64,000 nt of DNA from the NCBI RefSeq assembly GCF_021869535.1, contig NW_026262690.1:94550001-94614000 (forward strand), given 5' to 3'. The DNA is from Mytilus californianus. Its lineage: Eukaryota. A program made the translations under genes and the position numbers. The notes beneath the pieces are model-generated. The model was not told the origin of the DNA, made no database searches, and saw nothing but the letters and a program-made list of their open reading frames with translations. Of the stretch, positions 12,632 to 57,000 are shown in pieces; the first letter of the stretch is position 1, and every line of letters begins with the position of its first letter.

Positions 12632-12671
12632 TCACTGATGAGTCTTTTGTAGACGAAACGCGCGTCTGGCG
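12632..12671 (+). ncRNA. Minimal type I hammerhead ribozyme (family 1)
   Basis: CTGATGA (12635-41), stem II GTCT/AGAC with loop TTTGT, GAAA (12655-58), palindromic CGCGCG mini-stem III, GTC cleavage triplet (after 12666). Stem I is only 3 bp in this copy (TCA/TGG). Confidence 0.75.
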
Positions 12672-14315
12672 CAAATACAAAATTTCAATCCAGGTATCTA
12701 TGATGAGTTTATTATTAAGTGATTAACTGTCGTTTGCTTGACGTCCAGTTGCAAATATTTCATACATATTCAGGACGAGTACAAGTTCACAATAAATCCG
12801 GCAGGAATTAATTACAAATGCCACCACAAAAATAGGGACAGAAATTTTGCTTTACAACAGGCCATCTACGAAACCAGCAAAGAGGTGCTGCAAGGTTTTT
12901 TTTAACATTCACAGAACATGGAGATCTTTATACAAGAGGCATCCGTGCAAACGTGGCTGCGTACTTATACATCCTGCAAAGCCACACCCCTCTCTTAAGC
13001 ATTTGTTTACAAATATATGAAAATCCAGTGATTACCATATTTCTATACCATATTCAATATTATGGGTCTCATTTGCTTGGGGCTAATGAATACAAGAAAG
13101 AAAATAAAGACAAACAATAAAACAATCAAAGGGACATAATCAAAACTGATTTAGAATAGTATTTTAACTTATGCCTATACTAAATAAGAGACGTATATTC
13201 TAATACCAGTATGATTATATTGATTAAATTTAATTTATACTAAAATGTTAAACAGGAATTATGAATGGTGTTGTCACGAGAAATGTGGGCTACAACGTCA
13301 CAGAGACTTGCCCTTTTTATCGTTATTATGAAAAATGCATTGATTTTGAGGATTTTCAAGTGTCCTGAAAATGCAAGAAATAGTATTGTCACTGGACGTT
13401 GAGCAAACAACAATTGTAAAGCATGTAATAAGCACATGCTTTTAATATTTCGTTTGATTTCCAGTGTTCCTCCTTTGCAAATGCAAGCTTAATCATTCAC
13501 AACAGTGTCTGTCTATCTCACCAATATCTTACATGGTTCTTGCATATTTTCCCATTCACATTGTTTGTCAAAATTAAGTAAATTTGACAATTTGTAAGCA
13601 AGAAATTCAATTTGTTTCATTTGAATTTTTGAACTAAAAATCTAAGCAAATGTTCACAATGTATGAAATAGAACAGGAACCGCTTACTCTTCCTGATCAC
13701 ATGAGTTTACTCATGGCTTTCGGTTGTGTTCGCTTAACACAATCATTTGGATTGTGTTATGTATGTAGACTCTTTATTTTTGTGTTTCCGTCGTTTTTCT
13801 TTTGGCCATGCATAATGTAATCTTGGTTTTTCTTCGATTTATTGTATTGGTTGACCCCTAGGTATCATCTACTCCTTTTACAGTTATTATATTTATCAAT
13901 ATTTTAAACAGCAAATTCATAGGATCCGGTAATACTTCGATTTAAGGCCTAAAACAGATTTTCAAAGCAAAAACGCACACAAGAAAAGGAAAGAAAAAGT
14001 AAAACAAACAAGAATAATTACTTGTACTCATAATATTGAATATGAGCGATAAAAACATGATAAAGATTAAATATCAAGTCCACCTTTATTAAAAAACTGA
14101 CCGTCTGCTTTATTGGTGTTGATGTTTGTTCATAATTACAATTTACAGTATTTGCACACTTAAGGTAATCTTATGAGTATATATCTACTTTTATTTATAA
14201 TGTAATGCAAACTATGCCACATATGCTAGAATGAGGTATGCAAATTGTTAGTTTTTTTTTACACTTTTACTGGTTTTTTTTGCTTTTGTTTCTTTTCTAA
14301 TAATCTTATTTTACT

Positions 14316-17300
14316 TTATTTAAAGCATTCTGGAGGTGGAATAAAGATATTTGGATCTGTGATTCCAACGTTGATATCATAGAATCTGAAATAAGTGCAT
14401 TTATTCTATTAGACAAAATTTCAAGTTTGTGTGATTCATGTGATTTGATTTTGTAAATGTAAAACGATAAGTTATTAGTACATAATAGCAACTTGTCAAT
14501 AAAGTCGCCGTATTGTAAATCAGTACAATCATGCAGTAAATGTAGTCTAAACGTGCTGCGATCCCTCTACCCTTATTGCTACTGGCCTTTTTATAAAACT
14601 AGTAAACACAAAAAGTGTGGATTTTGTGATGGATTCCATATGGAAAAAGATATGTTTTGTTTTGAATGAACAATCCCCTATCAAACATAGCTTTAAACAA
14701 GGTCAATGTCGTGATGATTTCAAGTGAAATGTGCAATTTTATAATTTTTCACTATCAAATTTAATTTCAATGTTAATTTAATGCTAACCATTTATATCGA
14801 AAATGTTTCAAAGTTACACTTTTTTTCATGATTAAACAATTCCTCACTGTTTTTGAAGTATAATCTAATCAATTGTTAGATGATGGAGGGTTGCCTCCCC
14901 TGACTCACTGTGAGACAAAATTATGTATGAATTAATGTTTATATGTAAAAACCAATTACTATTCTATCAATCTTGTATGGGGAAAGGATTTACATATGCT
15001 GAGCCAATCCATTTGTAAAAACATAATTGATTTAAACAACAAAATCTTTGAATTGAATTGATCAACCAATACGAACATTTAAAATATCATCACTAAGAAC
15101 AGGATAAATAATCATGAAAGTATGTGTTCGAGTACACAATTTGAAAAGACATCATTTGTGTTCAACAAAATACTTACGACATGGTAACTAAACCGGTGTC
15201 GTTGCTAACGAAGTTGGTTTGAACAGGGTAACAGTCAGGTGATGTAACAAAACCAAAGTATCGTGCGCCTTCACGTTGCAAATAACCTGCAAAATTTTCT
15301 ATGGTAATAAATTCTCCGGGTAGACCTGAGACCCCAAGAGTTGCAGATCCTTCAAACTCTGCATCTGGAGGTACTCCGAATGGTCGGAATGGTCTTGTCA
15401 GTTGTGTAACATTACATTGGCGCGTTTTAAAATTTAATCTGTATTCTTTTCCCTGTAAAAATAAATGCATTGTTTTTAAATTGTAAAATTATGACAAGTT
15501 TGTATATGTTTTAGATGAACTTATAAATAATACTGCCGGTTGCTCATTTTCCCCTTGATATCTTCGAGGGTCATCTTCAAGCAGTTATTGGGAATCATTC
15601 TCCAAAATTTTAGAAAAGCTTTCGATCCATACATATGAAATGTTACATAAAATACCTGTTTTTGAATATTGAAAATAGATTTATGAAATTCTATTTGTCA
15701 TATTTGGCACAACTTTTGGGAAATTTTGGTGTTCAATACTCTTCAACTTCGTTCATGGATTGGCCTTCTTATTATTTTGATTCGAGCGCCACTGACGAGT
15801 CTTATGTAGACGAAAAGCGTGTCTGGCGTACCAATATATAAACTTGGTATCTTTGATAACTTGTTTTAACATCGATAAACTACCGTTGCAATGGTATATA
15901 AAAGAAGTAATACAACATCGTAGTATAGTCCCTGTCTCCACTCTTTACTTAAAGTGGTATGCATGAAGAAAAAGAACATATAAAGTGGTAGTCTCTGTCT
16001 TCACCTATTTAATTATAATTTTATGGAGGTATAGAACATCGTAGTAATCTCTGTCTTCACCAATTAGCTTACAATGTTATGTACGAAGAGAACATCGCAG
16101 TAGTCACTGTCTTCACCAATTTACTTACAATGTTATGGAGGTATAAAACATCGTAGTAGTCTCTGTCTTCGCCAATTTACTTACAATGTTATGGAGGTAT
16201 AAAACATCGTAGTAGTCTCTGTCTTCGCCAATTTACTTACAATGTTATGGAGGTATAAAACATCGTAGTAGTCTCTGTCTTCGCCAATTTACTGACAATG
16301 TTATGGAGGTATAAAACATCGTAGTAATCTCTGTCTTCGCCAATTTACTTACAATGTTATGGAGGTATAAAATATTGCAGTAGTCCTTGTCTTCGCCAAT
16401 TTACTTACAATGTTATGGAGGAATAAAACATCGTAGTGTAAATCTGTCTTCACCAATTTACTTACAATGTTATGAAGGTATAAAACATCGTAGTAGTCTT
16501 TGTCCTGACCAATTTCTATTTCTTCTATTATCCTCACTCTCTCGTTGGTTTCATCGTAGCTGACCTTTGATCTTTCTTCAAACATTTTTGACCTGTCATA
16601 CTGTATCAAATTTAGAAAGACAGTTATTAAAATCAGCAGTTGAATTATTTTCTATTATACCTTAAACATAAATCGTAATTATTATAGGAAATCCCCCTTT
16701 TTTGCCAACCGCTTTGATTCGAGCAAAATTTTTGGTCTTATATAGATGAAACACTCGTCTGGCGTACTAAAGTATAAGCCTAGTATCGTTGGTGATTTTT
16801 TTTTAATAAATGTACCGATTGTGAAATTTTGACTGTGTGTGTGTTCGTATGGCGTATAATGTATGCACTGCAGGAAACGCTTACCCTGTCGACGCATCCG
16901 GTTCCATTCTTTTATCAGTTAATATGATTTCCTCAGTTTTTTTGTTTTTACCTTGATTTGTATGTTCTTAATGGATTTATAAGATTTGCACATCGTTAAA
17001 ATTATATTGCCTATTATCTTATATTGTCTTTTCCGACAATATATTTTTTTTGTTCTCTAAAAGTAGGAGTGATATACCAGGCTGATGAACGGTTTTTAAA
17101 ATTTCTATGGCTGTTGTTTCTATTACTTTTTATCTTTAGAATGTTTTTAAAGCTCTCTGAAACCAGATGGTCAGATAGGAAGTTTTACTTTTTTTTATGT
17201 ATAAGAAGTTTGAGCAGGCGCAACACAAATGTGTTTAGTATTTTACTGGTCTACTTACCGCTACACGTCGACCTTCCCATTGTTTTGGGGATTCTGCAAT

Positions 17301-29352: not shown

Positions 29353-32239
29353 AGCTTAAGTTCATTTCGCTGAGTATATGACTCTAAAGGGTCAAATTAC
29401 GTCTATTATTATTACAGTAATAAAAAAATTGAATATTCTATAATCTTTTGTCAGCAGCAAACTCATTTATATGTTGTAAATGCAGTATACGTCTATTTCG
29501 ATGTTTTAATAGTATGTAATTTAGTCAGATAGTTGTATACCATCTTGAAGTCAAGACGTTCTCTGAATCCATATTCTATTGGAACTTGCGTATACAACTG
29601 TGGTGTAGCTTACCTACACAGATTATATGAATGTACAATTATGCTCCATCACAATAGGTTAATTTGTGCGATGACCCCTAATGCTTACATTTACGTCATT
29701 TTATCTATTACCACATCTCATTATTTTTATATTTTAACTTAATCAACTAAAATTGACCTTAGAATACTTTTGCAGTCATGTCTATTTTGTAGTTACACAT
29801 CGCTGGTTTTTCAAACTTTTACCAATCGGAGCGATAATTATGATGGTTGATCCAGAGTAGCGAATCGAATCGAAGGTAGCAAAATATTTTTTTAACATAC
29901 GAACATAAAACCGTTGGAATATAGAAATATAAATATAGAATGCAAGTTTCACATCAGGCAAAAAAACCCTTGCTTAAGTGGGGCGTCCGTTTGGGATTAT
30001 GGGTTGTATAAATACACAGTCACGTATGGTCGGAATAGAAACGTTTTGAAATCTTATTGATTGATTGATTGTTGCTTGTTTAACGTCCAGTGATTATTAT
30101 TTTATGCATATCAGGACGATAAACCAATAGCTATAATACAACAGGTCGGGTCTTCATGGTGGGACGACAGGGATGCAGGACGGGAAATTTGGATGCCACA
30201 GAAAAACAATAGTACCATGGATAGGGATGGAAATTTTGACGCGCATTAGGTCACGTTAACGTGCAGAGTTCGTGGCTCTCTCTGTTAATTCAATGAGTAA
30301 AGAAAACAAATTTGATTTTATATTTTCTTGTGAAGAATGTGATATTTTACTTATCATTGTTAACAATATAAGTGAAATGTATAATGAGAGAAACAATTAT
30401 AATGTCAGTATATGATCTGTGTGTGATTGGTGGCTTAACTTATAATGTTATATATAATCATAATATTTGAATTGATAATTTTATAGAGGAGGCATGCTGT
30501 CAAAAATAGTATAATACTTAATATTAATAATCTTTATTTTTTTTTTTTCAATGCTACATGTTTGTATTGTTTAATGTCTATCGTTTTGTCATTAATATGC
30601 CTGTCTGTCTGTCTGTTTGTTTGTTTTGTTTTGGTTTTGTATTGGTTGTTTATTTAGTAACAATCCTATTGTTTGGATTTTAAACTAATAAAATTCTTAT
30701 TCTTATTCTTATTATTCTCTGTTCTCGAGGCATCTTTAATGTCCTGATTCTGACAGGACGTGACTGCGAATTTATTCATCAGACATAGCCAAATGGATGC
30801 CCCATTTTGGCAAGGGTTTCGTGTCGGTCGGGAAAAGACCAAGGTGACCATATGTCTATACCACTGTCAATCTTTGGGTGCTCAGTGTGTAAGTCTTCGC
30901 TACGAATTCAAGGTGATGCACTGTTCCTATATGTTTTGCTTTTTTGTCAAGGGTGTGTGGGGTTTTGATTTTATGTTATGAGCTAATGCACCATATTCAT
31001 CTTTTTCCACTTGATACTCTTCAATCAATACAGAATTACACACTATCGGTCATTTTATAGAATGTTTGTATAAATATCTCAGATACTAAGAAAATTTTAG
31101 AGTAAACATTTGAGGATACTTAAGATAGTATCATATCGACAGAAGACTTACAACCCTTTCAAATTAGAACTCCAAATAGTTAAACAACAATCCAGCCATC
31201 ATATTACAATGTAGATCCGATGACGAATCTACTATAGATCTGAATAACATAAAAAAAATCATAAAGATCTCGGAAATTAATAATTTTATAAGTGTTGGGG
31301 GATTGCTCTCAATGTTAAATTAATTTGATGTATAGTAATGTTGGCCTCGAGTACTTCGACATAATCACCTTTTATTACTTTTTATTAGACTTAATCTAGT
31401 TCTTATTTCAGATATAAAAAAAAACACATGCACACCAACCGGTAAAGTTAAAGTTTCGTGCTCAAGATCAGCTTTAAACAGAATTAGGAAAAATTAGTCC
31501 GCGTTTAAAAATATCATTTTGTGATTTAAAAAATAACTATTTATCAATCTGAGATTGTACTAGATGGTCTTTTATTGACATTAGGGTTTGGTGTTTTTTT
31601 TTTTATTTCAATGCTCTTTAACTTCGTGATTGATTTCGCATTCCGACTGTTTTGATTTGAAAACGAGTAATTACTCTTATATATACGAAACGCGCGCCTC
31701 GCGTACTAAATCACAAGGCTGGTATCCTTGATGACATTTTTCTATTGTCACAAGTAAAATCGAGCTCAACATTACTTCTGTCAAAACAGTAACGGCCAAT
31801 AACAAGAGGCACTTAAGAGTCAATTTTTACCTTTGCAATCGGTTATGTTATTTTCGTATATTTTGTATTGCTGATAAGTTTTCAGTGCACAGTTTGCACT
31901 TATATATTATAGTTGTAAAAAATCGTCATTTAAGGACAAAAAATCCTTAAGGAATCATCCAATAGTTTCAGCCATATTGACATTTTTATAGATCTTGTAA
32001 TGCTTATCATTTTTGCCATAAACAGTTTCGACCTATCTAATATAACCATAGAATTAATAGGCAAAAATATGAAAATTAGCAAAAAATCCTCATTTTAAAG
32101 CGTTTACTTCTAAATGAGTCATTTTATAATTTTGGTGCAAACAGGAAGAAGGTAGATTTTGACATTTTGAGCTTTTTTGTTTCTGTCAGATATTCTCTAT
32201 CGATTATAGATTTCGAGATATAAAACAATTAATGCATTT

Positions 32240-33130: not shown

Positions 33131-36100
33131 ATGAAACTTATACTCCTCGCTCTCTGCTGTTTGGTCGTCGTATATGCTCAGGAGCCACGTCCATGTGGTA
33201 AGTTAGCAAATTACTTTAAAAATATCGCTTTTTTGCGATATTATTTTTCAATTTAAATAATAACAAATAAAAAATGCATGCAAACTGTATCAAGGTGATT
33301 GTAAGCTCAGTTACATTAAAATGGGATAAATAAAAGGGTCGGCCGATCAAAATTTAACGCTATGAGTACAGGTTCAAATAACTGATTAAGCTATGACTTG
33401 GTATTTTGGTGAGCAGAGAGAGACGAAGAGTAGGATATATTAAAAATTTCGAATATGTATACAAAAAAAAAACACGTACCATTATGAAATTATCTTCATC
33501 GAACAGTTAATTGTCACTTCCTTCTCTTCTCGTTTAATACCAAATCCGGTATATTTTATCGACTTTAACTTTGACTGATAACTATGTAAAGTTTATAAAT
33601 AGAGCGAATATCATGATAATCTATTATAAATAATAATAAATAATACTCATAATTACAACTTTATATTTTCCGATTATTTTTTTTTCTCTCTATGTTACTT
33701 TTTCTTTCCACTATTGCTATAATGAAAAAAAATGAAAATAACACTTTATAAATTATATGCGTCCGAAGTTATAACTATAATGCGTCCGAAGTTCTAACTA
33801 TAATGCGTCCGAAGTTCTAACTATAATGCGTCCGAAGTTCTAACTATAATGCGTCCGAAGTTCTAACTATAATGTGTCCGAAGTTCTAACTATAATGTGT
33901 CCGAAGTTCTAACTATAATGTGTCCGAAGTTCTAACTATAATGCGTCCGAAGTTATAACTATAATGCGTCCGAAGTTCTAACTATAATGCGTCCGAAGTT
34001 CTAACTATAATGCGTCCGAAGTTCTAACTATAATGTGTCCGAAGTTCTAACTATAATGTGTCCGAAGTTCTAACTATAATGCGTGTGGTGTTAGAGAACG
34101 TTGAGCAACAACTATAAAGTTCTAACTATAATGCGTGTGATATTAGTGTTCGCTGAGCAACAACTATATTTTTTTCGAGCTAATCAGAAAAACTTAAATT
34201 AAACATTTCAGCGAAGTAATTTAAGCATAGATTCATAGTACACCATTCGAAAGGTTACTGAAAATTTGATTCTTCGTAAAAGAAAATACGTTTTATAAAA
34301 GTTCATTACTAAGTTGGGACCAAACCTTCTCAAAACCAACTGCGGATCTGACTGTAGTACTCCCGTTACCAGAAAACCGTTTATATACATATAATAAAGA
34401 AGTATGTATCTTGCAAACGAATAAATTTTGCTTAACATGTCAACATTTATCCACAATCATGTTATCAAATGTGAATTTCGATTTAACATTTTGAAAATAT
34501 TCTTGCATTTTAGAATCTCCAAAGCAATGGGAAGGAAGGTTCCTTAGAGTAAGTAATAGTTTGTTCTTCTTTCAAATTCATTCATTTTTCTACAGAAGCA
34601 TGGCACGGTAGGTAAAGCGAACGAACACCATTCGAAACATAATGAAAACATACTTTAAAAGAATGAGATTTTTTAAAATCTATTTACTGCATGGATATAG
34701 TTGATCATAGTTGACCACATAATATATTTATTTATATTTATTTACATAAACAAAAATATTTGAGACATAACTAAAAAAAATAATTTAGTATTTGGATGAT
34801 ACCGTGATAGATACTTTAATTTCTTGGCAAACACACCAAAAAAAATAACAGTAATAAACATTGTGTACTATTCGTGATGAAATTGATACACTGACCACTA
34901 GTACGTAAATATAAGCTAGAGCAAACACTAAAAACTACTCCCGCATTCAACAGTTTATGTCTATCATTACAGATTAAACAATTTGAATTGGGGTTTACAA
35001 TTAGAATAAATGGGAACGATGCAAGAATTCTAATTTCTATAGACTGATCATTCATTAAAACTTAGTTCTGCACTAAAAGGTCGACGACAATATCTTCTGG
35101 AGCTTAAAATAGGCAACACTGTTTGGCTATGATGTGTTGATTAAGAGACTGAAAAAAGCAGAAAAAACGTGCGATTTAGTTATCCTTTTAGCTTTAGTGT
35201 TGTGTTTATCAAGAAGCTATTAACACTTCAATTTATATTTTTGCAGGCCGACAGAACAAAAATGTTCGGTGAATTAGCTAAACTGAGCTATGACGAAACT
35301 AACAGAAGAGCCAGAGAAATCGAGGAAGTTCAAATTGGTCAAGACAGGGAATATTATGATGTTCTTTATCTCCATAACATTGTAAGTGTTTATTTAGTTT
35401 TTTTTTCTTGTTCAGGTGAAAGGTCATAAATATGATTTACAACCAATACGATAAAAAGTTCATAATTCTATTACTAAGCACAAGTGTAATCAAAATTAAG
35501 AGTACACAAACTTGTGTTCAAAAAACGAAAACAACACGTTATAAATTTCATGCGTCCGAAGCGCTATTCTGGATATCAAAGTTGCACAAGGAAACGGGAA
35601 TAGTTGATATCTAGGGTGTGCAATTAAATCGAAAAACAACCAGCTCGACTAAGAAAGTCAACAAGGATGAATGAAACCCTGTAAACCTCATGATCAAAAT
35701 ATATCGACTTCCGGTAAGACCCGGAGACAATCTGTTTACAGTTAGAAATGCTAGATGTTGAACAATAAGTACCACTTTATTACAAAATCGCTTGAATGTT
35801 GATTAACATTGGAACCTTATTTTGATTAAAAACTTCTATTGAACATTCCTAAGTTGGATCCTTAGTATTTGGCTATTATTTTTTAAATTCTTTTTGGTCA
35901 TATAGCCCTTCACTTGTTTCGCTTCTTATACATTCTTGGCTTTGGGCGTTCCTGATGATGGTTAATCCAGAAAAGCGCTTTGGACGCATTTTTAAAGTGT
36001 TGTTTTCATTTTTTTCCACAATGTCTTCGATCTATCATCAAAACATAGAGTTAAAGTTATATTTTTATACATACAGGGAAAAGAATATAGATTGAACCTG

Positions 36101-37373
36101 AAAACAAGAAAGTGTAATGTAACAAACCTATTTAGACCATTCAGACCATATGGAGTACCCCCAAATGCCCAATTTGACGGATCTGCTACCATTGGCGCCG
36201 CTGGTGTTCCAGGAGAATCTATTGTTGTCGAGAACTGGTCTCTTACTGACGGAGACGACAAATTCTACGGAATGGTTTCATCTCCAGACTGTGTTCCAAT
36301 TGAATATGCCTTCTACTCACAAGAGTCCAGCTTAATCACTACAACGTAAGTGCTTTTAAAAAATGATTTGCAGGATATTCAGATATATGTTGCTCTTTTA
36401 TGAAATTGATAAAATATTCATTCAGTTGCATTCCTTAAAAAAAAAATCATACTTCCCACTGTTGTCCTTCTTTTTCCCAGACCCCAGCTTAATCACTACA
36501 ACGTAAGTGCTTTTAAAAAATGATTTGCAGGATATTCAGATATATGTTGCTCTTTTATGAAATTGATAAAATATTCATTCAGTTGCATTCCTTAAAAAAA
36601 AAATCATACTTCCCACTGTTGTCCTTCTTTTTCCCAGACCCCCCAATTTTTACTCCCTTTTTGCCACATCCCCAATTTTTCACCTACTGTATCTTACATC
36701 CTCGCGTTTTCATCCCCTATATCCTACATCTCAGATACTAAACTTTAATATTTCTTTCATTAAAATTTAGAGAAGCAATGTTTTAATGGATATTAAAAAG
36801 TAAAATAACAAAAATATCGAACTCAAATGAAAATTATAAACGGAAAGTCCGTTATCAAATGGCAAAATCAAAAGCTCAAACACCAAACACATCAAACGAA
36901 TGGAAAACAACTGTTATATTCCCAACTTGGTACAGACATTTCCTTGTGTAGAAAATGGTGGATTAAATCTGGTTTTTATCAAATGATATTAGATTTAAAC
37001 TATACTTTATCTTGGAATACAAAGAAAACTATGTTTGTTGTATTCAACAGATAAATGGTTCGATATAACATTTGAGCGACTTGAAACGTTTTTGATTTCA
37101 TAATCATATAAAACATAAATACTCCTCAGGACCTAATAAGAACAAAAGACAGGAGTGTGATTATATTTTCATGAGAGAATTTACTAAGTTTTCATAAATT
37201 TGATATCAAAATAAACATACATTTTGTTTTAAAATATTGTTATTTTACTTATAAATATACGCAACCAATTAATTTTACTCCTGCTTGTTTCTTTTTACAG
37301 ATTCTTTGACATCAACGTTGGAATCACAGATCCAAATGTTTTTATTCCACCTTCAGAGTGCATGATGTTATAA
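33131..37373 (+). CDS. EPDR: Ependymin-related protein B, 192 aa; exons 33131-33197, 34514-34548, 35247-35381, 36077-36345, 37301-37373
   Basis: GT-AG exons in phase (67+35+135+269+73=579 nt). MKLILLALCCLVVVYA-QEPRPC-ESPKQWEGR, SYDETNRR, KCNVT, SSPDCVP, FIPPSEC. AATAAA at 37380-85. Closest to paralogue A. Confidence 0.92.
33758..34079. repeat. 23-bp minisatellite, 14 units, in EPDR-B intron 1
   Basis: Unit TGCGTCCGAAGTTCTAACTATAA. Variant order is A BBBB CCC A BBB CC (A = GTTATA variant, C = TGTGTCC variant). Confidence 0.95.
35946..35987 (+). ncRNA. Minimal type I hammerhead ribozyme (family 2), sense in EPDR-B intron 3
   Basis: Stem I GCGTTC/GGACGC (6 bp), CTGATGA (35952-58), stem II TGG/CCA with loop TTAAT, GAAA (35970-73) and palindrome AGCGCT. 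The cleavage triplet is TTT; other copies have TTC. Confidence 0.75.
36327..36640 (+). repeat. 157-bp direct duplication of the EPDR-B exon 4 end, donor and intron start
   Basis: CCAGCTTAATCACTACAAC|GTAAGTGC...TTCCCAGACC occurs at 36327 and 36484, essentially identical. Confidence 0.9.
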
Positions 37374-38431: not shown

Positions 38432-38572
38432 TTAAGAGTAAATGCGATTCCATCAGTTTTTTGTTTGTCTGTTAACTTTATTCGTATCTGTTTAACTGAT
38501 GTACGAGATTTGAACACCGGTAAACTACGGTAGCTTAAACCTATTACCATCAGAACATTTAATAAATTAAGA

Positions 38573-38613
38573 GGGTCCGAAGCGTTTTTCTGAATTTATC
38601 CATCATCAGGAAG
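38573..38613 (-). ncRNA. Degenerate family 2 hammerhead
   Basis: CTGATGA-TGGA-TAAA-TTCA-GAAA-AACGCT-TC-GGACCC. Core and stem II are intact; the palindrome and stem I have decayed. Confidence 0.55.
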
Positions 38614-38921
38614 AACATGCCAACCAAAAAAAAAAAAATAAAAAAATTGAACGCCAACGATGTATAAATTCGTGTATACTTGATGAGCTTTGAGATCAAA
38701 AGGAACATAAAATAATAGCCAAATACACATAAGGTAAAACTTTACCTGAGGGAGCTGTAACCTTAGTTTCTTACTATGACTGTCTATAAGTAGATGATCT
38801 TGTCTGATTTGATGTTTCCATACGTGGTCGTGTGCTACTCTGAGAGACTGGTATACTAGTATTACTTTCATATTCTGACGATTTCCTCAAATGTCATCAT
38901 CTTTTAAAACCAAACAACCTT

Positions 38922-48639: not shown

Positions 48640-51017
48640 ATTTGGTATCCTTCGCCTCTCTTATAAATCTTACTTTTTTTCAATTCCGAAAACAATTATT
48701 CTTATGATGGCAGGTTTGTTTCGTGTAAAAATTTCTGAACTAATATCAAAATATGATATGCAGTTTTCAACGTTTTACGATTGTAATAATGCTTTACTTG
48801 GCCTAGTTGATTTATAACTAATAACCGACATTCATTAGTTGTGTAAATATAAACTATATAGGTACGTTTGAGGTTGGTAGGTTACCAAGTAGATTTATAG
48901 CTGCCTTCCATTAACTGTACAATCATAGTTTTGTTTAAAAGGGGTGTTTCATTAGTTTTTAGTGTCGCATTTTGTTCTATTTTATTGTTCAGTGTTTGTG
49001 TTGGTTTGATCGGTAACAGTTTCGGCTATTCCTTGTCGTCTTTGGAAACCATATTTTCATTCCATATTTTCACATTCGGACAAGGTTTAGGGTCATATAA
49101 TTTTCTTGATCGATGGTTTATGAATTTGGTGATACAACATTCATTTGCAAATACGCTATTGTAAGATGCTTATATAAAAAAAGAAGATGTGGTATGATTG
49201 CGACTTAGCTAAGACTTTTTATTGTCTTTTATAAATTCATATTCACATAAATCATAAGAAGTATAACACAAAACAGGTTTTAACAAAACAATCTGTTAAA
49301 ACATGTTTAAATATAGATATAAGCCTTTCAAATCAAAAAGAAAAAAAGAAAAAAAGAAGAAGAATGACCTACAAGAAAGATGAGTATACAAAGATAAAAA
49401 CCAATAGCTACAAATTATTGCGTTCACAATCTTTCTGCGTTTCGAAGGCACCAAATTTATATGGTAGTATTTTTTTCTTTTGTAACACTGTGTTGATACC
49501 ACTTTTAGTGGACTGCTATTCCTCCAGAGTATCACCAGACCAGTAGCCGGCGCTTCGGTACTGACATGGTTAACAACTTTTTAATTCTTCGTTGAATTTA
49601 GAAAATTTCATGAAACCAAACTCAATCAGGCAAAGTTGACGTCAGGTGGATTTGGCTATTCTTTTAAGGTTCCCTTTGGTCATGTAGTTCATCACGTGTT
49701 TTAGTTTGAGCGAATCCAAATAAGCGCGCCGAAATCACCAAGTTTATAAATAAAGTGTAATTTTGATTTGACAGCTTAAAAAAGTCTGTTTGTTCCTTAT
49801 TAAGCTTAATCATTTGTATATGCCTGAGCGATTTAAGTCGAAATACCATGCAGTAAACTGAATATTTATTAACTATCGAACTCCTAGAATTGTTAACAAC
49901 TTATCATGATACTAAAACTAGTTTAGTAGACCTAAAAATATCGATGTTTAATCTTTGCTCCATCCAAAAAAGTTACATTTCAAAAAGTAACAGCTCTAAG
50001 AAAGAAATGTCATTCTAACATTGAAAGGTATTTCTATGCCAAAACGACCGGTCTTTGCTTTCACCTGAAAATGCTGCATGATTAGCGGAGAAGCCTCAAA
50101 TGACATTTTTTGGTTTCCCCTCAACCCCCAACGCTCAAGTCCAACACGCTGTACCTCAAGACCACTAAGGCAAATCAGAGGAAATAGGGCGATTAAAACA
50201 TATAAACACTTCACAAAGTGTACAAAGTGACCAGATTATATCAATGGATTTTAAAGTTAAATGGCCGATAGTAAGCTGATCAGTAAAAAAAAACAAAACA
50301 ACCAAAATTGGGAAAATAAAAATAAACCTTGATAGCCGTTGAAAAACTATGAATATTAGGATGTCACATATCCTGCTTGATTCATACAGGGAGATGAAGC
50401 TTAAATAAAGTCTCTAAGTATGTACATGAATGTAAATTTTATTGCTGAACGAAAATACGAACTCTTAAAAAAAACACCAAAGTTCAATTTTACTTGAACT
50501 AATTAGAATATGAAGTCTTGAAATAATTACATATTTTCACCCACTAAACGAAATGTGTTTACATTTATCAAAGGACATGCAAGATTAGTAACTGAACCAA
50601 AGGACAAAAAGAGAAAGAAAAGAAAAACACGCAATCAACTACAGCCCTTACAGATTTTCATAAACGCAACCATCTTGTATTTTACTTTTATTTTTTTAAT
50701 AAAGTGACTATCGATCATATTTATTTTAACATCTTTCAATCTTTTCCATTAAAATGTTCAGAAAAAATAAATATTTATATAATTTGATAAATATTGTAAA
50801 ATGCGTAGTTTTTAATCTCATTTTGAAAAGATTATTTGGCAAAATTCAAAACATTATGATAAACATGACTTGTTGTTCAAAATTAAAATTTGGCATGTGG
50901 ACCAAAATATTTGAAGGCCATTGTCCGTACTTGGTTTTCAATCGAGTACTAGTGATGTTTGAGATCCGACATATTAAAAGTATATCGGGGAATGACCGAC
51001 TTGTGACAGCCATCATC

Positions 51018-54000
51018 ATGAAACTTTTCGTAGCTCTTTGTTGTTTTGTTCTTGCACAGGCTCAAATTCCAACTCGATGTGGTAAGTTTGATATGCATAT
51101 TTTTGAAAACTAACAAATGTTTCTTTCATTCTTGATATTGAATCTCTCGATGTGGTTTATCGAGCAGAATATGGAAAATTAGTCTGTTATAGATGTTTAA
51201 GCGACTTTCTTTTTTAAGAACAATATGACGAGGTGAAAACAGTGTGATGTATTAAAAAATGTATTTATAAAGCTTTGTCTTTTGGACAAAGCAAATTTTG
51301 CATTTTTGCTTTGATAAAGTAATCTGGCTCTATACGGCTGTTTTTGGAGACAAAGTGACTAAAAATAGAAAACCATCATACTTATGATTAATATATCGAG
51401 AGCATAAAAAACAAAATAGATAAAATCCTCGGAACGCTAAAGAGATGCGTAGATGCCCATACCCTCTAACGCTGGAAACAATGGCACCTAAGGTGCTTCG
51501 AAAGGGTAAATAATTCATTGCTCAATTTTTGAAAACATGAAGTTGTATGCATTTTTTTTTCTTTTAAATGCCAACAGATGTGAAGCCAAAAAGCATTTCA
51601 AATATTACGTTATAAAATGAAACTCAATCTTTCCCTGTGTGACAGCAAACAAAACAGTTACCAAACAAAAGAGAGGCGAAAGATACCACAGGACATTCAC
51701 ACTCATAAGTCGAAATTAAACTGACAACGCCATGGCACAAAATGGTGATGAGGGGACAAAATGTCCACCAGCAGAGACATCGACCAAGTTGTTGTAAAAG
51801 AGAGGCGAAAATACCGAAGGGACTTTCAAACTCATAAGTCGAAAATAAACTGAAAACGCCATGGCTAAAAAAGAAAAAAACCAAAAGACAAACAACAGTA
51901 CACAAAACACAACATAGAAAACTAAAGACTAAGCTACACGAACCACACCAAAAACCGAGAGTAATCTCTGGTGCTTCGGAAGGGTTAGCAGATCATGAAA
52001 CAGGAAAAAAATCATCATTTACTACATATTAACACCAGTGTTATGTCTAATATATAGAACTATTAAGTTAAGATATTGTCTATCATCGAGAACAATTGTG
52101 AACGATGTTTCATATTCTGAAAACTTAGTGGCCAACATAGATACACGTATCTTGTCTTAGGGAGGGATAAATCGTACTTTGTAAAAAATCACTCTGATTT
52201 AAACAAAAAATTCCCTGAAACCGACATTATCAAGATGCTTGATTTATTGATTGACAAGGTATGTGTTACGTTTCGGGGATGTGCTTTTCAACAAACAATC
52301 AGCATTCGCATGGGAACCAACTGTGCTCCTCTTCTTCCTGACTTGCTCCTTTATTCACATAAGGCTGACTTCATACAGGAACTTCTTAGGAAGAATGAAA
52401 GAAGTTAGTAGTATCCTTTAACTTCACTTTCCGCTATATAGATGATGTTCTCTCACTAAATAATTCGAAATTGGGTGACCTATGTTGAACGCATCTATCC
52501 CATCGAATTTGAGATAAAGAATACAACAGATACAGTTAAGTTTGCCTCATATCTTGACTTACATCTAGAAATTGATAATGAAGGTCGGTTGAAAACAAAG
52601 CTTTAGGACAAAACCAATGATTTCAGCTTTCCAATTGTGAACTTTCCATATCTATGTAGCAGCATTCCGGCAACGCCTGCATACGGAGTATATATCTCCC
52701 AGTTGATACAATATTCCGGGGTTTGTATTTCCTATCATGACTTTCTTGATAGAGGGTTGCTGCTCAGAAGGAAGCTTTTAAACCAAGAGTTCCAAGAGGT
52801 GAAGTTGAAATCATCCTTTTGTAAATTTTACGGACGCCACCACGAGTTGGTTGACCGTTATGAAATATCCGTTTCACAATTCCGTCCCCTTTTCCCCGAA
52901 TGTGACCTTTCGAATTAGAATTATCACTGGGTTTGTAATAACATAAGCAACACAATGTACAATATGGAGCAGGATCTGCTTACCCTTCTGGAGCACCTGA
53001 GATCACCCTCATTTTTGGTGGGGTTCATGTTGCTCAGTTTTTAGTTTTCTATGTTGTGTTTTGTGTACCGTTGTTTGTCTGTTAGTTTTCTTTTCTTTTT
53101 TAGCCATGGCGTTGTCAGTTTATTTTCGACTTATGAGTTTGAATGTCCCTTTGGTATCTTTCGCCTCTCTTTTTACCTTTTTGTGCTAGATTAAGGGCAT
53201 TTTAAATAAGCCGCTGTCAATGCAAAATGTTTGCATAAGTGTGTTATCATCATCTACGAGTTACTATTTACAAAAGCTCATTTTCACCTTAATTACCATT
53301 ATTGACGGGTTTGGAGTCTGGAATTCGAAGAAATTAGATAAGTTTAGAAGAGATTAGAATTTTTGATTTCTTTTACAAATCACAATACTATTACAGCTTT
53401 TAAAATAAAATTGAAAATGGAAATGGGGAATGTGTCAAAGAGACAACAACCCGACCATAGAACAGACAACAGCAGAAGGTCACCAACAGGTCTTCAATGC
53501 AGCGAGAAATTTAAAATGTTTGTTTTAAGCTATGTGATGAAGTTGAACGACAGCTGCATCTCCCATTGAGCAATGACTTTGACGACTTCACTTTTTCTGT
53601 GTTAATGTCCTTTTCAGTTTTGATATTCAAAATGTTTCATGTATTTGGCTCCCCACACTCTTGAGGTCTGACGATGTACGCTCTAAATCCATATAATAAC
53701 AATAGAAAATAACAATAATAGTAACAAACAAGAAGACGTTTCAACATAATATATGATAGGTTACATCATACACCATTTGACAAAAATTGTCAATCTTAAT
53801 TTCCAGATCCACCAAAGCAATGGGAAGGCAACATTCTTCGTGTAAGTTAAACATGATAATTGAATTTTAGTATATATGTGACTAGATCGAACTCTTCTTG
53901 TGGACAAAAACACATATGTCTCACATTCATCTATATCATGTATAGAAGTTTCTAAAGTATACAAGAAGTACAACTCATATATTCTAGTACTTGATAGGTA

Positions 54001-57000
54001 TTGTCTTGCAAATAAGAATATATATATATATTTCAAGATGTTATAGTTTAATTTAAGTAGACTGATATATGATTCATTCAACATCACAATCATATTTACT
54101 GATGAAGGATATCTGTTATCCGAAATATTTATAAATAATTACATTTATAGTTCCTTTTTTTGTTATTGGTGTTGTTGTGTACACTTTTTAGGCGTTTATA
54201 TAATTTATTTATTGTGTACATGTATCGTTACTCGTAACGATCCAGCGCCCTCGTGGGAAAAATCGTTGACTATTATTCAGACGTTTTATATATATATATA
54301 TATTTAACAATTTGATAATATGAGTAGGTTGGACTAAAAATGTCTTTTCATAGCAGTACAGGTTATGCATGGTATAGGGGTGGGATCAGAAAAGTTTATG
54401 ATTTATTTAGCATTAACTCTAAAACCAGGAAATGTTGAATGAGAAGCTGGCATTAGGTCAAATTATATGATATGAATTAATTTCTATATAAAAAAAAGCT
54501 GAAATATGTCGTCAAAAAGTAGTTTTTATTCTGAATCTAGCATTTGAAGTAAAAAAAAAATATGTGACCCAGAATACTGACGAGAGTTGTTTGAGAAACA
54601 GAGCATTGGGGACGTCTGCCTTTGCTTGTTGAAAATAGATTACGGTTTGATACCTTCCATGCAATACATTATTTGGTGCTAACCATACTAAAAAATATAA
54701 TTTGAAACCTTTTGTTTTCCTTGATCATTTTTTTTTCGCTTCGCGCCACCACGTGTCAAACATAGCCAACACTTAGCATGTAGGTTCTACATGGTGAAAC
54801 ATAAACTGTCACAGTTGAAACAAAATTTTACAGTTTGATATGTTGATTAAATGATTAAAAAATGAAAACAACATGTTATAGTTTTCATCCGTCCAAAAAA
54901 AAAAAACAAACTTACCCGAGCGACTAATAAATCGAAGGGAGCATGGAGAAATATCTGATTTCAATTAAACGGTGTCAGTCAAATTAGTCATGGTTAAGTT
55001 TAAAACAGTTTCATTGTGAGACATGTTATTGTAAAAGAGTGACGAAATATACCAAAGGGATATTCAAACTCGTTAGTTGTGAACAAACTGAAAATACCAT
55101 GGCAAAAAACTAAAAACGACAAAAAACAGTAAACAAAACTAAACGCAACACAGAAAACTAAACGCAACACAGAAAACTAAATACTGATCAACACGCACCC
55201 CAACAAAATTCCGGGGTTGATCTAAGGGGCTCCGGAAGGGTAAGCAGATCCTGCTTCCCTAGTGGCACTCGTGTAACTTATACCAATGAATTTAATGTCT
55301 CTCTTTTCAGCTAAAAACTACCACATTGTCGTTAGATTAAACCTTCTGACACAATTCTGTGAAAGCCTTTACCAAATAATCGAGTAAAAGCACGAAAATA
55401 ACGCCCTTGCTCAATAGGGTTAAATGAAGGGAAAACATCTGATTTTCTGGTTTTATTTTCATATTTATGATAAACAGGTCGCTAGAGGAAGCTCTATAAA
55501 ACCAAAGAATGAAAGACTTAAAGTCAGTTACGATGAAACCAATCAAAGAGTCCGAGAGATAACTGAGTCTTCATTTCCACCTAAACCAGGACAAGAAATG
55601 TATAAAGTTATTTATCTACACCAAACTGTAAGTTATGCTTATATTCATGAGGTAAAAGGTGGGTTATTTTTTCAGCAGATGCGTGTCTTATCATATTCAT
55701 GAACCATACATTGAGATGAGAAAACGATTAACCACAAATTAGATATAAATGATTTAATACACGAAATTACAAAATAAATAACCATATAATTAGATGCAAA
55801 TGAATAACCATACAACTATAAACAATTTAACAACTATACAATTATAAACAAATGAACAATTTAAAAAGTCGGAATGCGAATATATATGTTCAAACTCTTT
55901 TAGGTAATATTTAGTAACAACAAACAGAAGAACTAGTTCAATAAGAACTGCTTGGATACGATAAATGCATTTGAATTCTTACTAGATAACATTTTTGTTC
56001 GCTATTGAGATTCCGTATATCGTCAAGTTATCGGAATTCCAATGGGGAAACTATGCATCACTTATTGCAGACCTGTTTCTGTATTGTTACGAGTTACAAT
56101 TTATGATCCATCGAAACAACATCTGTTACAAAAATTGAATAATACTTTTAGATATTTGGCTGATATATTGGCTCTCAGTAATGACTTCAGTATGTACAGA
56201 AAGAGATTTATCCTGCTGAACTTACTTTGAATAAAGCTAATACTAACAATAAAAACTGCCCTTCCCTGGATCTTGATATCTATATATTTTTAACGGAAAG
56301 CTATATACTAAAATTTACGATGAAAGAGATGATTTTTCAATTCCTATTGTTAATTATCCATTTTTAGATGGTGACGTTCCCTTGGCATCATCATATGGGA
56401 TTTATGTATATCAACGTGTTCGATTCGCTTGTGTATGTTACAACGTATTGGATTTTAACAAAAGATATCTCTGTATTACTGAAAGATTATTACACCAGGG
56501 TTTTCGATATCACAAACTTGTCAAAACATTTACCAAATTTTATCATCGGTACAAGGACATCATTCGTAAATATAAATCAACGTGCAGACATCTTATACGT
56601 TCAAGTATTTCACATCCCATCTTTTATTGTAATATTCTATACAAAGCACAAACATGTCGTCATTCACGTCAAAAGCTAACCAAACCTTTAAACAGACTTA
56701 TTCAGAAGGGATAATGTTACGATACTGTTGTAAAGTCATTAAAGATGGCATTTTTTGGAATTAATATTGATTCACTCAAAGGGTCTTCGCATCGGAAATA
56801 AACACATTTATTCTAAAATCAGTTATTAGCACGATACGGGTTATGTTCTTCTTGTATATTTTATGATGGTATGTTGATAAACCCCTAACTGGAGGGATTG
56901 TGCTTGATTTTCATATGATGAAAACATAATATTTCAATCAGTTTAATTGAGGTCTGGAGCTGGCATGTCAGTAACTGCTAGTAGTCATTTGATAATCTAT

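What the first reader, a model, noticed from the sequence alone, without database searches (positions are those of the whole stretch)
35521..36012. Sense-strand hammerhead ribozyme in an ependymin intron, preceded by its own inverted antisense copy
Seen: 35946-35987 has every element of a minimal type I hammerhead (6-bp stem I, CUGAUGA, stem II, GAAA, AGCGCU palindrome, UUU triplet) on the strand transcribed as EPDR-B pre-mRNA. About 400 nt upstream in the same intron, 35521-35574 is an inverted partial copy complementary to the ribozyme's 3' half (CCA-GAAA, cleavage site, stem I 3' strand and about 25 nt downstream). Established: such minimal hammerheads mark Penelope-like elements and metazoan retrozymes, and need dimerisation through the palindrome. 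Inference: the inverted copy is transcribed first and could pair with the ribozyme to stop intronic self-cleavage, acting as a cis antisense lock that lets the host gene tolerate or regulate the ribozyme.
Basis: partly seen in the sequence, partly recalled or inferred. Interest (0 to 1): 0.8.

Follow-up and report, generated by a model that had tools for sequence, protein, structure and literature searches.

The report
Two decayed retrozyme fragments in intron
The hammerhead-like motif and its upstream "antisense copy" are real. They are two separately inserted, truncated fragments of a very abundant mussel mobile element (a hammerhead-carrying retrozyme) in an ependymin gene intron, and nothing found here shows that they act as a regulatory lock.

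Summary
Observation confirmed. 35520-35574 is an inverted copy of its 3' half plus tail. Both lie in a 695-nt intron (35382-36076) of a + strand ependymin gene.

Both are 5'-truncated fragments of one repeat family: 147 nt (+, 35868-36014) and 56 nt (-, 35520-35575). The family is a 353-nt, often tandem, non-coding unit. Its 25-nt core occurs 2,752 times exactly in this 1.65-Gb genome. The unit is homologous along its length (67%) to the published Mytilus galloprovincialis retrozyme Mg353. Compensatory changes in helices I and III support a shared hammerhead fold.

The two fragments look like independent insertions:
- 292 nt of single-copy DNA separate them.
- Their nearest relatives are 88% (+) and 96% (-) identical.
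- They carry different subfamily markers.
- 2 of 55 sampled family loci have an inverted partner within 500 nt.

The + copy has U instead of the family's C at the cleavage nucleotide, a CpG transition to a poor substrate.

Folding predicts that the arms pair (-58.6 kcal/mol). The hammerhead fold stays improbable when the antisense arm is scrambled.

The "antisense lock" is not supported, though not excluded. RNA data could not be obtained. Earlier scan notes report many retrozyme copies elsewhere in this genome.

The parts
35946..35987 (+). Hammerhead-like motif. Helix I is 35946-35951 paired with 35982-35987. CUGAUGA is 35952-35958. Helix II is 35959-35961 paired with 35967-35969. GAAA is 35970-35973. 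Helix III plus the GCGC loop is 35973-35980. U17 is 35981, so the putative cleavage site is 35981|35982.
   Evidence: Read directly. It is homologous to a family with 2,752 exact core copies. Helices I and III covary with the published mussel hammerhead. There is no Rfam hammerhead hit at E up to 10.
35868..36014 (+). 5'-truncated fragment (about 147 nt) of the 353-nt 'family B' retrozyme unit. It ends at the family's common 3' terminus, the T-run about 40 nt past the cleavage site.
   Evidence: blastn against a genomic unit covers 35867-36018. The part 35868-35945 scores z = 12.6 against 200 dinucleotide shuffles.
35520..35575 (-). 5'-truncated fragment (56 nt) of the same family in the opposite orientation. 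It starts in loop 2 and holds the 3' half of the hammerhead (GAAU instead of GAAA; UUC|G intact) plus the 3' tail.
   Evidence: 93% identity to unit positions 337-392. The best genomic relatives are 96% identical, and matches stop at exactly 35520 and 35574.
35576..35867 (.). Spacer of ordinary intron DNA between the two fragments.
   Evidence: It has only a self-hit in the 1.65-Gb genome. It has no similarity to the retrozyme unit on either strand (z from -0.8 to 0.9).
35382..36076 (+). Intron 2 (695 nt) of a + strand ependymin-related gene. It runs from the GTAAGT donor at 35382 to the ACAG acceptor ending at 36076.
   Evidence: splice signals and reading frames; the flanking exons align with paralogous exons in the window.
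35247..35381 (+). Exon 2 of the ependymin-related gene (inferred).
   Evidence: Open frame with canonical splice sites. It is 72% identical to a paralogous exon at 16460-16597. The 45-aa piece alone gives no Pfam hit.
36077..36345 (+). Exon 3 of the ependymin-related gene.
   Evidence: Pfam PF00811 Ependymin at E 1.6e-19, 70.7 bits. The genome-wide family search gives 86.2 bits here. The GTAAGT donor is at 36346.
33722..34084 (-). A third truncated family-B fragment (33722-33768, minus) in intron 1 of the same gene. Its 5' end has expanded into a 23-bp satellite, and each unit contains the antisense of the cleavage site plus the helix I 3' strand.
   Evidence: It is the subject of another first-reader note (s1-322424) and was not analysed further here.

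Best explanation
Intron 2 of a mussel ependymin-related gene holds two independent, dead-on-arrival insertions of a non-autonomous hammerhead retroelement: a retrozyme family, here called family B. Its unit is 353 nt, 37% GC, non-coding and often tandem.

Shown: every genomic insertion of the family ends at the same 3' site about 40 nt past the hammerhead cleavage site, and has a variable 5' end. This is the signature of reverse transcription primed at a fixed internal site with 5' truncation. The + fragment (147 nt) carries a whole hammerhead motif. The - fragment (56 nt) carries only the motif's 3' half and the tail, so the two share about 55 nt in inverted orientation.

Inferred: the copying enzyme is a Penelope-like element reverse transcriptase. 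The + fragment is the older one and has lost the family's C17 through a CpG transition (UUC|G to UUU|G). In the pre-mRNA the arms would form an imperfect duplex of about 50 bp closing a 390-nt loop, as any inverted intronic repeat pair does. The lone, short-helix-III, U17 hammerhead is unlikely to cleave at a meaningful rate with or without that duplex. The arrangement is most likely neutral transposon debris removed with the intron.
For: Family and copy number:
- 1,711 first-look candidates.
- 2,752 exact matches of the 25-nt core against 0 for the reversed control.

Unit structure and common 3' end: tandem spacing is 349-357 nt. Across 59 loci the insertions end at unit positions 37-46 and start at variable positions.

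Homology to the cloned M. galloprovincialis retrozyme Mg353:
- The Mg353 sequence is in the supplement of PMC7229834.
- The Mg353 hammerhead 32-mer occurs 1,536 times exactly in this genome.
- The global unit-to-unit alignment is 67% identical, with long conserved blocks.

Hammerhead fold shared by the two families: 98.1% of cells are paired, 3 pairs change on both sides, 0 of 500 shuffles reach the paired percentage or the covariation score, and slid controls pair at most 42%.

Independent insertions:
- The spacer is single-copy and unrelated to the unit.
- The arms are only 82% identical to each other.
- Best relatives are 88% identical for the + copy and 96% for the - copy.
- The + copy lacks a 16-nt segment, as do L003 and L027, and carries the AAAGTG tail variant, as do L018 and L020.

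Chance juxtaposition:
- 8 family-B fragments lie in this 64-kb window.
- 3 of 55 sampled loci have an opposite-strand fragment within 1.5 kb, and 2 within 500 nt. One of the three is head-to-head and two are tail-to-tail.

Decay of the + copy: UUC is the family norm, and the first 100 listed core matches are mostly UUC, roughly nine in ten. UUU is called a poor substrate in PMC6908138.

Folding:
- The arm duplex is -58.6 kcal/mol and stem probabilities in the intron are about 0.
- With the arm scrambled, stem I is still at most 0.004.
Against: - Expression, splicing, 5'-OH ends and editing are therefore untested.
- No orthologous or allelic locus could be examined, so presence or absence and conservation are unknown.
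- The age argument rests on short stretches (55-85 nt) and on nearest-relative identity, which also depends on subfamily size.
- Secondary-structure energies do not discriminate. The experimentally active canonical mussel hammerhead is also not its own minimum-energy fold (-3.4 against -13.1 kcal/mol), so folding cannot show that the + copy is inactive.
- The Mg353 hammerhead has a similar 2-bp helix III plus GCGC loop and cleaves at about 0.1 per min from a single-ribozyme construct (PMC7229834). A monomeric architecture alone therefore does not exclude activity.
- The -/+ head-to-head orientation is the one typical of Penelope-type complex insertions.
Confidence: 0.85

Rival explanations
1. 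Cis antisense lock. The upstream inverted fragment is retained because it pairs with the 3' half of the intronic hammerhead in the nascent ependymin pre-mRNA. This prevents or tunes self-cleavage.
For: The antisense arm is transcribed first. It covers the 3' strand of helix II, GAAA, helix III, the cleavage site and the helix I 3' strand. The predicted duplex is -58.6 kcal/mol, and the intron's minimum-energy fold pairs the arms. Scrambling the arm raises the predicted probability of helix II from about 0.00004 to as much as 0.3. Intron 1 of the same gene holds further antisense copies of the cleavage-site sequence.
Against: - The arm is an independent, apparently younger insertion from another subfamily.
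- Inverted neighbours occur at about the rate set by repeat density.
- Stem I stays at most 0.004 when the arm is scrambled.
- The ribozyme copy already has U17 and no tandem partner.
- There is no evidence of conservation or of cleavage.
- Unchecked scan notes list sense-oriented intronic retrozyme copies elsewhere in this genome, some of them tandem.
Confidence: 0.04
2. One complex insertion event. Both fragments were made together by a Penelope-type enzyme, which often leaves an inverted 5'-truncated copy head-to-head with the main copy. No function is implied.
For: The orientation is -/+ (head-to-head), as described for PLE insertions (PMC8557442). In this genome about 20 opposite-strand pairs of GIY-YIG endonuclease hits within 10 kb are all -/+ and none is +/-. 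The family's fixed 3' terminus downstream of the hammerhead fits internal initiation by a PLE reverse transcriptase (PMC11167929).
Against: - PLE inverted copies are described as immediately adjacent. Here 292 nt of single-copy, unrelated DNA lie between the fragments.
- The arms differ by 18% and carry subfamily-diagnostic differences.
- Their distances to nearest relatives are unequal, 88% against 96%.
- In the family sample, opposite-strand neighbours show no head-to-head bias: 1 against 2.
Confidence: 0.08
3. An active intronic ribozyme. The + copy still self-cleaves, alone or by pairing its AAGCGCUU palindrome with abundant retrozyme RNA in trans. It would thereby lower or shape ependymin mRNA output.
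For: All core nucleotides are present and U17 obeys the NUH rule. This copy has a U10.1-A11.1 pair where most family members have an A.A mismatch. The related Mg353 hammerhead is active in vitro and its RNAs are very abundant in mussel tissues (PMC7229834).
Against: - UUU is a poor substrate (PMC6908138).
- The motif fails the Rfam hammerhead model, as does its whole family, while the canonical mussel motif scores 32.5 bits.
- The predicted probability of the fold is low in every context tested.
- The copy is about 12% diverged from its nearest relatives, as expected for neutral decay.
Confidence: 0.03

Closest known systems
Metazoan non-LTR retrozymes, specifically the Mytilus galloprovincialis retrozyme Mg353 (Cervera & de la Pena 2020, Nucleic Acids Res 48:5054, PMC7229834)
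   Same: Both have a unit of about 353 nt that is low in GC (37%), non-coding and often tandem, with one type I hammerhead per unit. The units are homologous along their whole length (67% global identity, with blocks such as CACTGGGTCGAT..CTGCTGGTGGA). Both have a 2-bp helix III capped by GCGC. Both have thousands of copies. The exact Mg353 hammerhead is itself present 1,536 times in this genome.
   Different: Family B has a different helix II: A.A or U-A, then G-C, G-C, with loop UAAAU, instead of G-C, U-A, C-G with loop UUUUGUA. Helix I and helix III differ by compensatory changes, and the 3' tail differs. Rfam Hammerhead_1 scores the canonical motif at 32.5 bits and gives nothing for family B. 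The paper describes two hammerhead consensus families that differ only in loops 1 and 2 and in upper helix I, so family B is probably not one of them. That could not be checked against its figure. The window holds only truncated fragments, not a unit.
Minimal hammerheads of Penelope-like elements (Cervera & de la Pena 2014, Mol Biol Evol 31:2941, PMC4209133)
   Same: Both have a short helix III with a palindromic loop that suggests action as a dimer, an unpaired or odd nucleotide at the 5' base of helix II, and massive genomic copy number. Monomers of the PLE motifs have low activity.
   Different: No PLE reading frame or pseudo-LTR is attached here. The carrier is a 353-nt non-coding tandem unit. 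PLE min-HHRs typically have a long helix II (6-8 bp) and a short helix I, and here it is the reverse.
Conserved intronic hammerheads of amniotes (Rfam families Hammerhead_HH9 and HH10; named from memory, not tested here beyond the Rfam scan)
   Same: A hammerhead motif in the sense strand of an intron of a protein-coding gene.
   Different: Those are single-copy, deeply conserved, canonical ribozymes. This one is a diverged copy of a repeat with thousands of members. No conservation could be shown and there is no Rfam match.
Inverted intronic repeat pairs such as inverted Alu pairs (general knowledge, not tested)
   Same: Two oppositely oriented retroelement fragments in one intron that are predicted to form a long intramolecular duplex in the pre-mRNA.
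   Different: The arms here are short (about 55 nt) and imperfect (82%). No editing or splicing effect was tested.

Membership tests
Hammerhead ribozyme, type I | Conserved core: CUGANGA, then GAAA, with helix II between them | tested here: met
   CUGAUGA is at 35952-35958 and GAAA at 35970-35973. Both boxes are invariant in the alignment of 13 family-B and canonical copies.
Hammerhead ribozyme, type I | Three helices around the core, supported by covariation | tested here: met
   For helices I and III, 98.1% of cells are paired, 3 pairs change on both sides and 0 of 500 shuffles reach that. Few independent events underlie this, since only two related families were compared. Helix II is 3 bp in the window copy (U-A, G-C, G-C).
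Hammerhead ribozyme, type I | Canonical G10.1-C11.1 pair at the base of helix II | tested here: not met
   The window copy has U10.1-A11.1. The family majority has an A.A mismatch.
Hammerhead ribozyme, type I | Cleavable NUH triplet, with C17 preferred | tested here: inconclusive
   UUU is formally NUH but is described as a poor substrate (PMC6908138). The family norm is UUC.
Hammerhead ribozyme, type I | Match to the curated covariance model (Rfam RF00163, gathering score 34 bits) | tested here: not met
   There is no hammerhead hit at E up to 10 for 35300-36200, nor for seven intact family-B units in L016. The canonical mussel motif scores 32.5 bits.
Hammerhead ribozyme, type I | Site-specific self-cleavage | not testable with these tools
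   This needs transcription and cleavage assays or end-mapping of RNA.
Metazoan non-LTR retrozyme | Tandem repeats of about 170-400 nt, each with a type I hammerhead, low in GC and non-coding | tested here: met
   This holds for the family: spacing is 349-357 nt in arrays of 2 to 7 or more units, GC is 37.1%, and no sustained reading frame is present. The window's pieces are only 147-nt and 56-nt fragments.
Metazoan non-LTR retrozyme | Homology to a described retrozyme | tested here: met
   The unit is 67% identical along its full length to a genomic unit that carries the exact Mg353 hammerhead.
Metazoan non-LTR retrozyme | Expression as linear and circular RNA of unit length | not testable with these tools
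   No RNA runs could be obtained.
Penelope-like element | Reverse transcriptase plus GIY-YIG reading frame flanked by pseudo-LTRs that carry the hammerhead | tested here: not met
   In 59 family loci, the sequence upstream of the hammerhead is the 353-nt non-coding unit or unique DNA. No reading frame lies next to the window's fragments. PLE endonuclease genes are abundant elsewhere in the genome, but their 3' ends could not be fetched.

The most novel reading that the evidence does not exclude
The younger antisense fragment was retained because its duplex with the hammerhead's 3' half shields the ependymin pre-mRNA from ribozyme cleavage, or otherwise tunes splicing of this intron. That would be a host-level 'antisense lock' on an intronic self-cleaving ribozyme.
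Probability: 0.03. Interest if true: 0.6.

Novelty: new member of a known kind. Interest (0 to 1): 0.17.

Why it matters
As it stands the locus is ordinary: transposon debris in an intron. Two things may be worth keeping.

First, the repeat behind it is a high-copy sister family of the published mussel retrozyme. Its hammerhead has a non-canonical base of helix II (A.A at 10.1/11.1) and escapes the Rfam model. Motif-based censuses of animal hammerheads may therefore miss it, and it gives a natural test of how much of helix II the ribozyme needs.

Second, the family's fixed 3' terminus about 40 nt past the cleavage site, together with 5'-truncated multimers, bears on how retrozymes are copied.

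If the lock idea were true, it would be a new way for a host gene to tolerate a self-cleaving RNA. Nothing here favours it.

Tried and rejected
- **Rfam.** The scan of the whole window at gathering thresholds found 0 hits. The scan of 35300-36200 at E up to 10 found only chance matches (DUF2693, snR66, RT-17, PreQ1) and no hammerhead.
- **Composite mobile unit.** I asked whether 35520-36014 is itself a mobile foldback or MITE-like unit. Rejected: the spacer has only a self-hit in the genome.
- **Fragments abutting head-to-head.** I asked whether the spacer is diverged retrozyme sequence. Rejected: alignment scores equal those of dinucleotide shuffles. An earlier permissive alignment had suggested otherwise.
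- **Empty site in paralogues.** Only the exons of the paralogous ependymin genes in the window align; the introns do not.
- **Monomer and dimer energies as a test of activity.** Rejected as uninformative, because the experimentally active canonical hammerhead behaves the same way.
- **Autonomous partner.** Whether a PLE shares the family's 3' end remains open.
- **Other steps.** The spliced protein was not joined; exons were searched separately.
Full report
**What is in the sequence**

The + strand at 35946-35987 reads GCGUUC CUGAUGA UGG UUAAU CCA GAAA A GCGC U U U GGACGC. It has these hammerhead elements:
- a 6-bp helix I (35946-35951 with 35982-35987, one G-U pair);
- both core boxes;
- a 3-bp helix II;
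- a 2-bp helix III closed by GCGC, so that AAGCGCUU is an 8-nt palindrome;
- a UUU triplet that would place cleavage between 35981 and 35982.

The upstream inverted copy is also real. The repeat finder reports two arms: 35520-35546 with 35988-36014 (27 nt, 89%) and 35550-35574 with 35965-35989 (25 nt, 92%). The 25-mer across the cleavage site matches the minus strand at 35550-35574 with two mismatches, against none expected in shuffles.

**Gene context**

- Exon 2 (35247-35381) has an AG acceptor and a GTAAGT donor.
- Exon 3 starts at 36077 after ACAG and ends at 36345, before a GTAAGT donor.
- Exon 3 matches Pfam Ependymin at E 1.6e-19. The window holds four of the five clustered ependymin hits on this chromosome piece; the fifth lies just past its end.

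The two elements therefore lie in a 695-nt intron, on the transcribed strand as claimed.

**What the two pieces are**

The 91 nt around the motif have at least 1,711 first-look candidates in the window's own 1.65-Gb genome. The 25-nt core ATCCAGAAAAGCGCTTYGGACGCAT occurs 2,752 times exactly, against 0 for the reversed control.

I oriented and compared 59 loci. They show a unit of 353 nt (spacing 349-357) that occurs singly or in head-to-tail arrays of up to seven or more units. Every insertion ends at the same place, unit positions 37-46, which is a T-run about 40 nt past the cleavage site. The 5' ends vary. This is the pattern of a retrotransposed, 5'-truncated, non-coding element. The unit has 37% GC and no sustained reading frame.

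Measured against a genomic unit:
- The + copy in the window covers 35868-36014 (147 nt). The part upstream of the motif scores z = 12.6 against shuffles.
- The - copy covers only 35520-35575 (56 nt). It starts in loop 2, so it holds the 3' half of the hammerhead and the tail.
- The 292 nt between them have only a self-hit in the genome. They are no more similar to the unit than shuffled sequence is.

**Relation to what is published**

The supplement of Cervera & de la Pena 2020 (PMC7229834) gives the cloned Mytilus galloprovincialis retrozyme Mg353. Its hammerhead 32-mer is present 1,536 times exactly in this genome. One 5'-truncated copy lies at 12632-12713 of the window. The genome is therefore a Mytilus-type mussel, which is an inference from that identity.

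A genomic unit carrying that canonical hammerhead aligns with the family studied here along its whole length, at 67% identity with long conserved blocks. I call the present family 'family B'. It is a sister of the published retrozyme.

The two hammerheads differ in a way that preserves the fold:
- 2.1/1.1 is A-U in the canonical motif and C-G in family B.
- 15.2/16.2 is C-G in the canonical motif and A-U in family B.
- Three further helix I pairs differ by single compatible changes.

On an alignment of 13 distinct copies, 98.1% of cells in helices I and III are paired and three pairs change on both sides. None of 500 shuffles reaches the paired percentage or the covariation score. Slid controls pair at most 42%. 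These are few independent events, since only two related families were compared, but they support a genuine hammerhead ancestry.

Helix II is replaced outright. The family majority has an A.A mismatch at 10.1/11.1, then G-C and G-C. The window copy and a minority of others have U-A at 10.1/11.1. Rfam's Hammerhead_1 model scores the canonical mussel motif at 32.5 bits against a gathering score of 34. It gives nothing at E up to 10 for seven intact family-B units or for the window.

The paper describes two hammerhead consensus families that differ only in loops and upper helix I. Family B is therefore probably unreported, though I could not see the figure.

**Are the two fragments one thing or two?**

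Several observations point to two independent insertions.
- They are separated by single-copy DNA.
- The arms are only 82% identical over 55 nt.
- The + copy lacks a 16-nt segment, as do L003 and L027. It carries the AAAGTG tail variant seen in L018 and L020. The - copy has the majority tail.
- The best non-self relatives are 88% identical for the + copy and 96% for the - copy. This suggests that the ribozyme-bearing copy is older than its supposed lock. The stretches compared are short, so this is an indication and not a date.

The juxtaposition is not unusual. The window alone holds 8 family-B fragments and 5 canonical-family fragments. In 55 non-overlapping family loci, 3 have an opposite-strand fragment within 1.5 kb and 2 within 500 nt. 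One of the three is head-to-head and two are tail-to-tail. With thousands of copies, on the order of a hundred or more such inverted pairs are expected genome-wide.

A single Penelope-type complex insertion is the main mechanistic rival. PLE insertions often carry an inverted 5'-truncated copy head-to-head (PMC8557442). In this genome about 20 opposite-strand pairs of GIY-YIG hits within 10 kb are all -/+. However, those inverted copies are described as immediately adjacent. The unequal divergence, the subfamily differences and the unique spacer argue against a single event here.

**Is the + copy a working ribozyme, and would a lock matter?**

The family norm at the cleavage nucleotide is C. 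The first 100 listed exact core matches are mostly UUC, roughly nine in ten, and UUC dominates the sampled copies. The C lies in a CpG, so the window's U is the expected deamination product. UUU is described as a poor hammerhead substrate (PMC6908138).

The copy is a lone monomer with a 2-bp helix III. The literature says such motifs generally need a second copy to form an extended helix III (PMC4209133). However, the Mg353 hammerhead has a similar helix III and cleaved at about 0.1 per min from a single-ribozyme construct (PMC7229834). Architecture alone therefore does not exclude activity.

Folding results:
- The arms are predicted to form a duplex of -58.6 kcal/mol.
- The intron's minimum-energy structure pairs them.
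- The hammerhead stems have predicted probabilities near zero in the intron.
- With the antisense arm scrambled in five trials, stem I stays at or below 0.004. In local windows it is at most 0.15.

In this model the lock is redundant. The model is weak evidence, because the experimentally active canonical hammerhead is also not its own minimum-energy fold (-3.4 against -13.1 kcal/mol).

**Verdict**

The identification as a retrozyme/PLE-type hammerhead is right. The 'cis antisense lock' is physically possible but unsupported.

The most economical account is two independent, truncated insertions of an abundant retrozyme family into one intron. The older one carries a decayed hammerhead. I put 0.85 on this account, 0.08 on a single complex insertion without function, and about 0.03-0.04 each on an active intronic ribozyme and on a selected lock.

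**What could not be done**

- No related genomes are available for this assembly, so conservation is untested.

Earlier notes of this scan, which are unchecked AI notes, report many hammerhead retrozyme families in this same genome and several sense-oriented intronic copies. They agree with the present reading but were not used as evidence.

Noticed in passing
window 33722-34084: A third truncated family-B fragment (minus strand) lies in intron 1 of the same ependymin gene. Its 5' end has grown into a 23-bp satellite of about 14 units. Each unit contains ATGCGTCCGAAG, the antisense of the hammerhead cleavage site plus the helix I 3' strand. It is already the subject of note s1-322424.
   Followed up: partly
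window 12632-12713: A 5'-truncated copy of the canonical mussel retrozyme carries the exact published Mg353 hammerhead core but lacks the 5' strand of helix I. Further canonical-family fragments lie at 2756-2843 (-), 15701-15868 (+), 16713-16803 (+) and 31599-31734 (+).
   Followed up: partly
window 38555-38772, 49437-49701, 51752-51799, 54857-54897, 58081-58422: Five more family-B fragments. Six of the eight family-B pieces in the window are on the minus strand, while most ependymin genes here are on the plus strand. This may be an antisense bias of insertions in genes. The sample is far too small to test, and no annotation was available.
   Followed up: no
window 36309-36642: A 157-bp tandem duplication (96% identical) copies the last 37 nt of ependymin exon 3 together with its GTAAGT donor (36346 and again 36503). 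This creates a second potential 5' splice site downstream. It resembles the minisatellite noted in the paralogue at 15905-16600 (s1-322413).
   Followed up: no
genome-wide (coordinates): There are at least 1,480 candidate GIY-YIG endonuclease matches, many in open frames of 755 or 911 aa, so Penelope-like elements are abundant. About 20 opposite-strand pairs within 10 kb are all -/+ (head-to-head) and none is +/-. One array on C110 has a 3,927-bp spacing.
   Followed up: partly
family-B loci L002-L060: Insertions often begin at unit positions 324-331, inside or just after CUGAUGA (L008, L021, L022, L052, L053, L059). This gives a short partial hammerhead, one full unit and then the 40-nt tail. 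It may be a preferred template-switch or termination point of the copying enzyme.
   Followed up: no
L016 and L068 (genomic arrays): Rfam Hammerhead_1 places the experimentally validated type of mussel hammerhead just under its gathering score (32.5 against 34 bits) and misses family B entirely. Default Rfam annotation would therefore report no hammerheads in this retrozyme-rich genome.
   Followed up: yes
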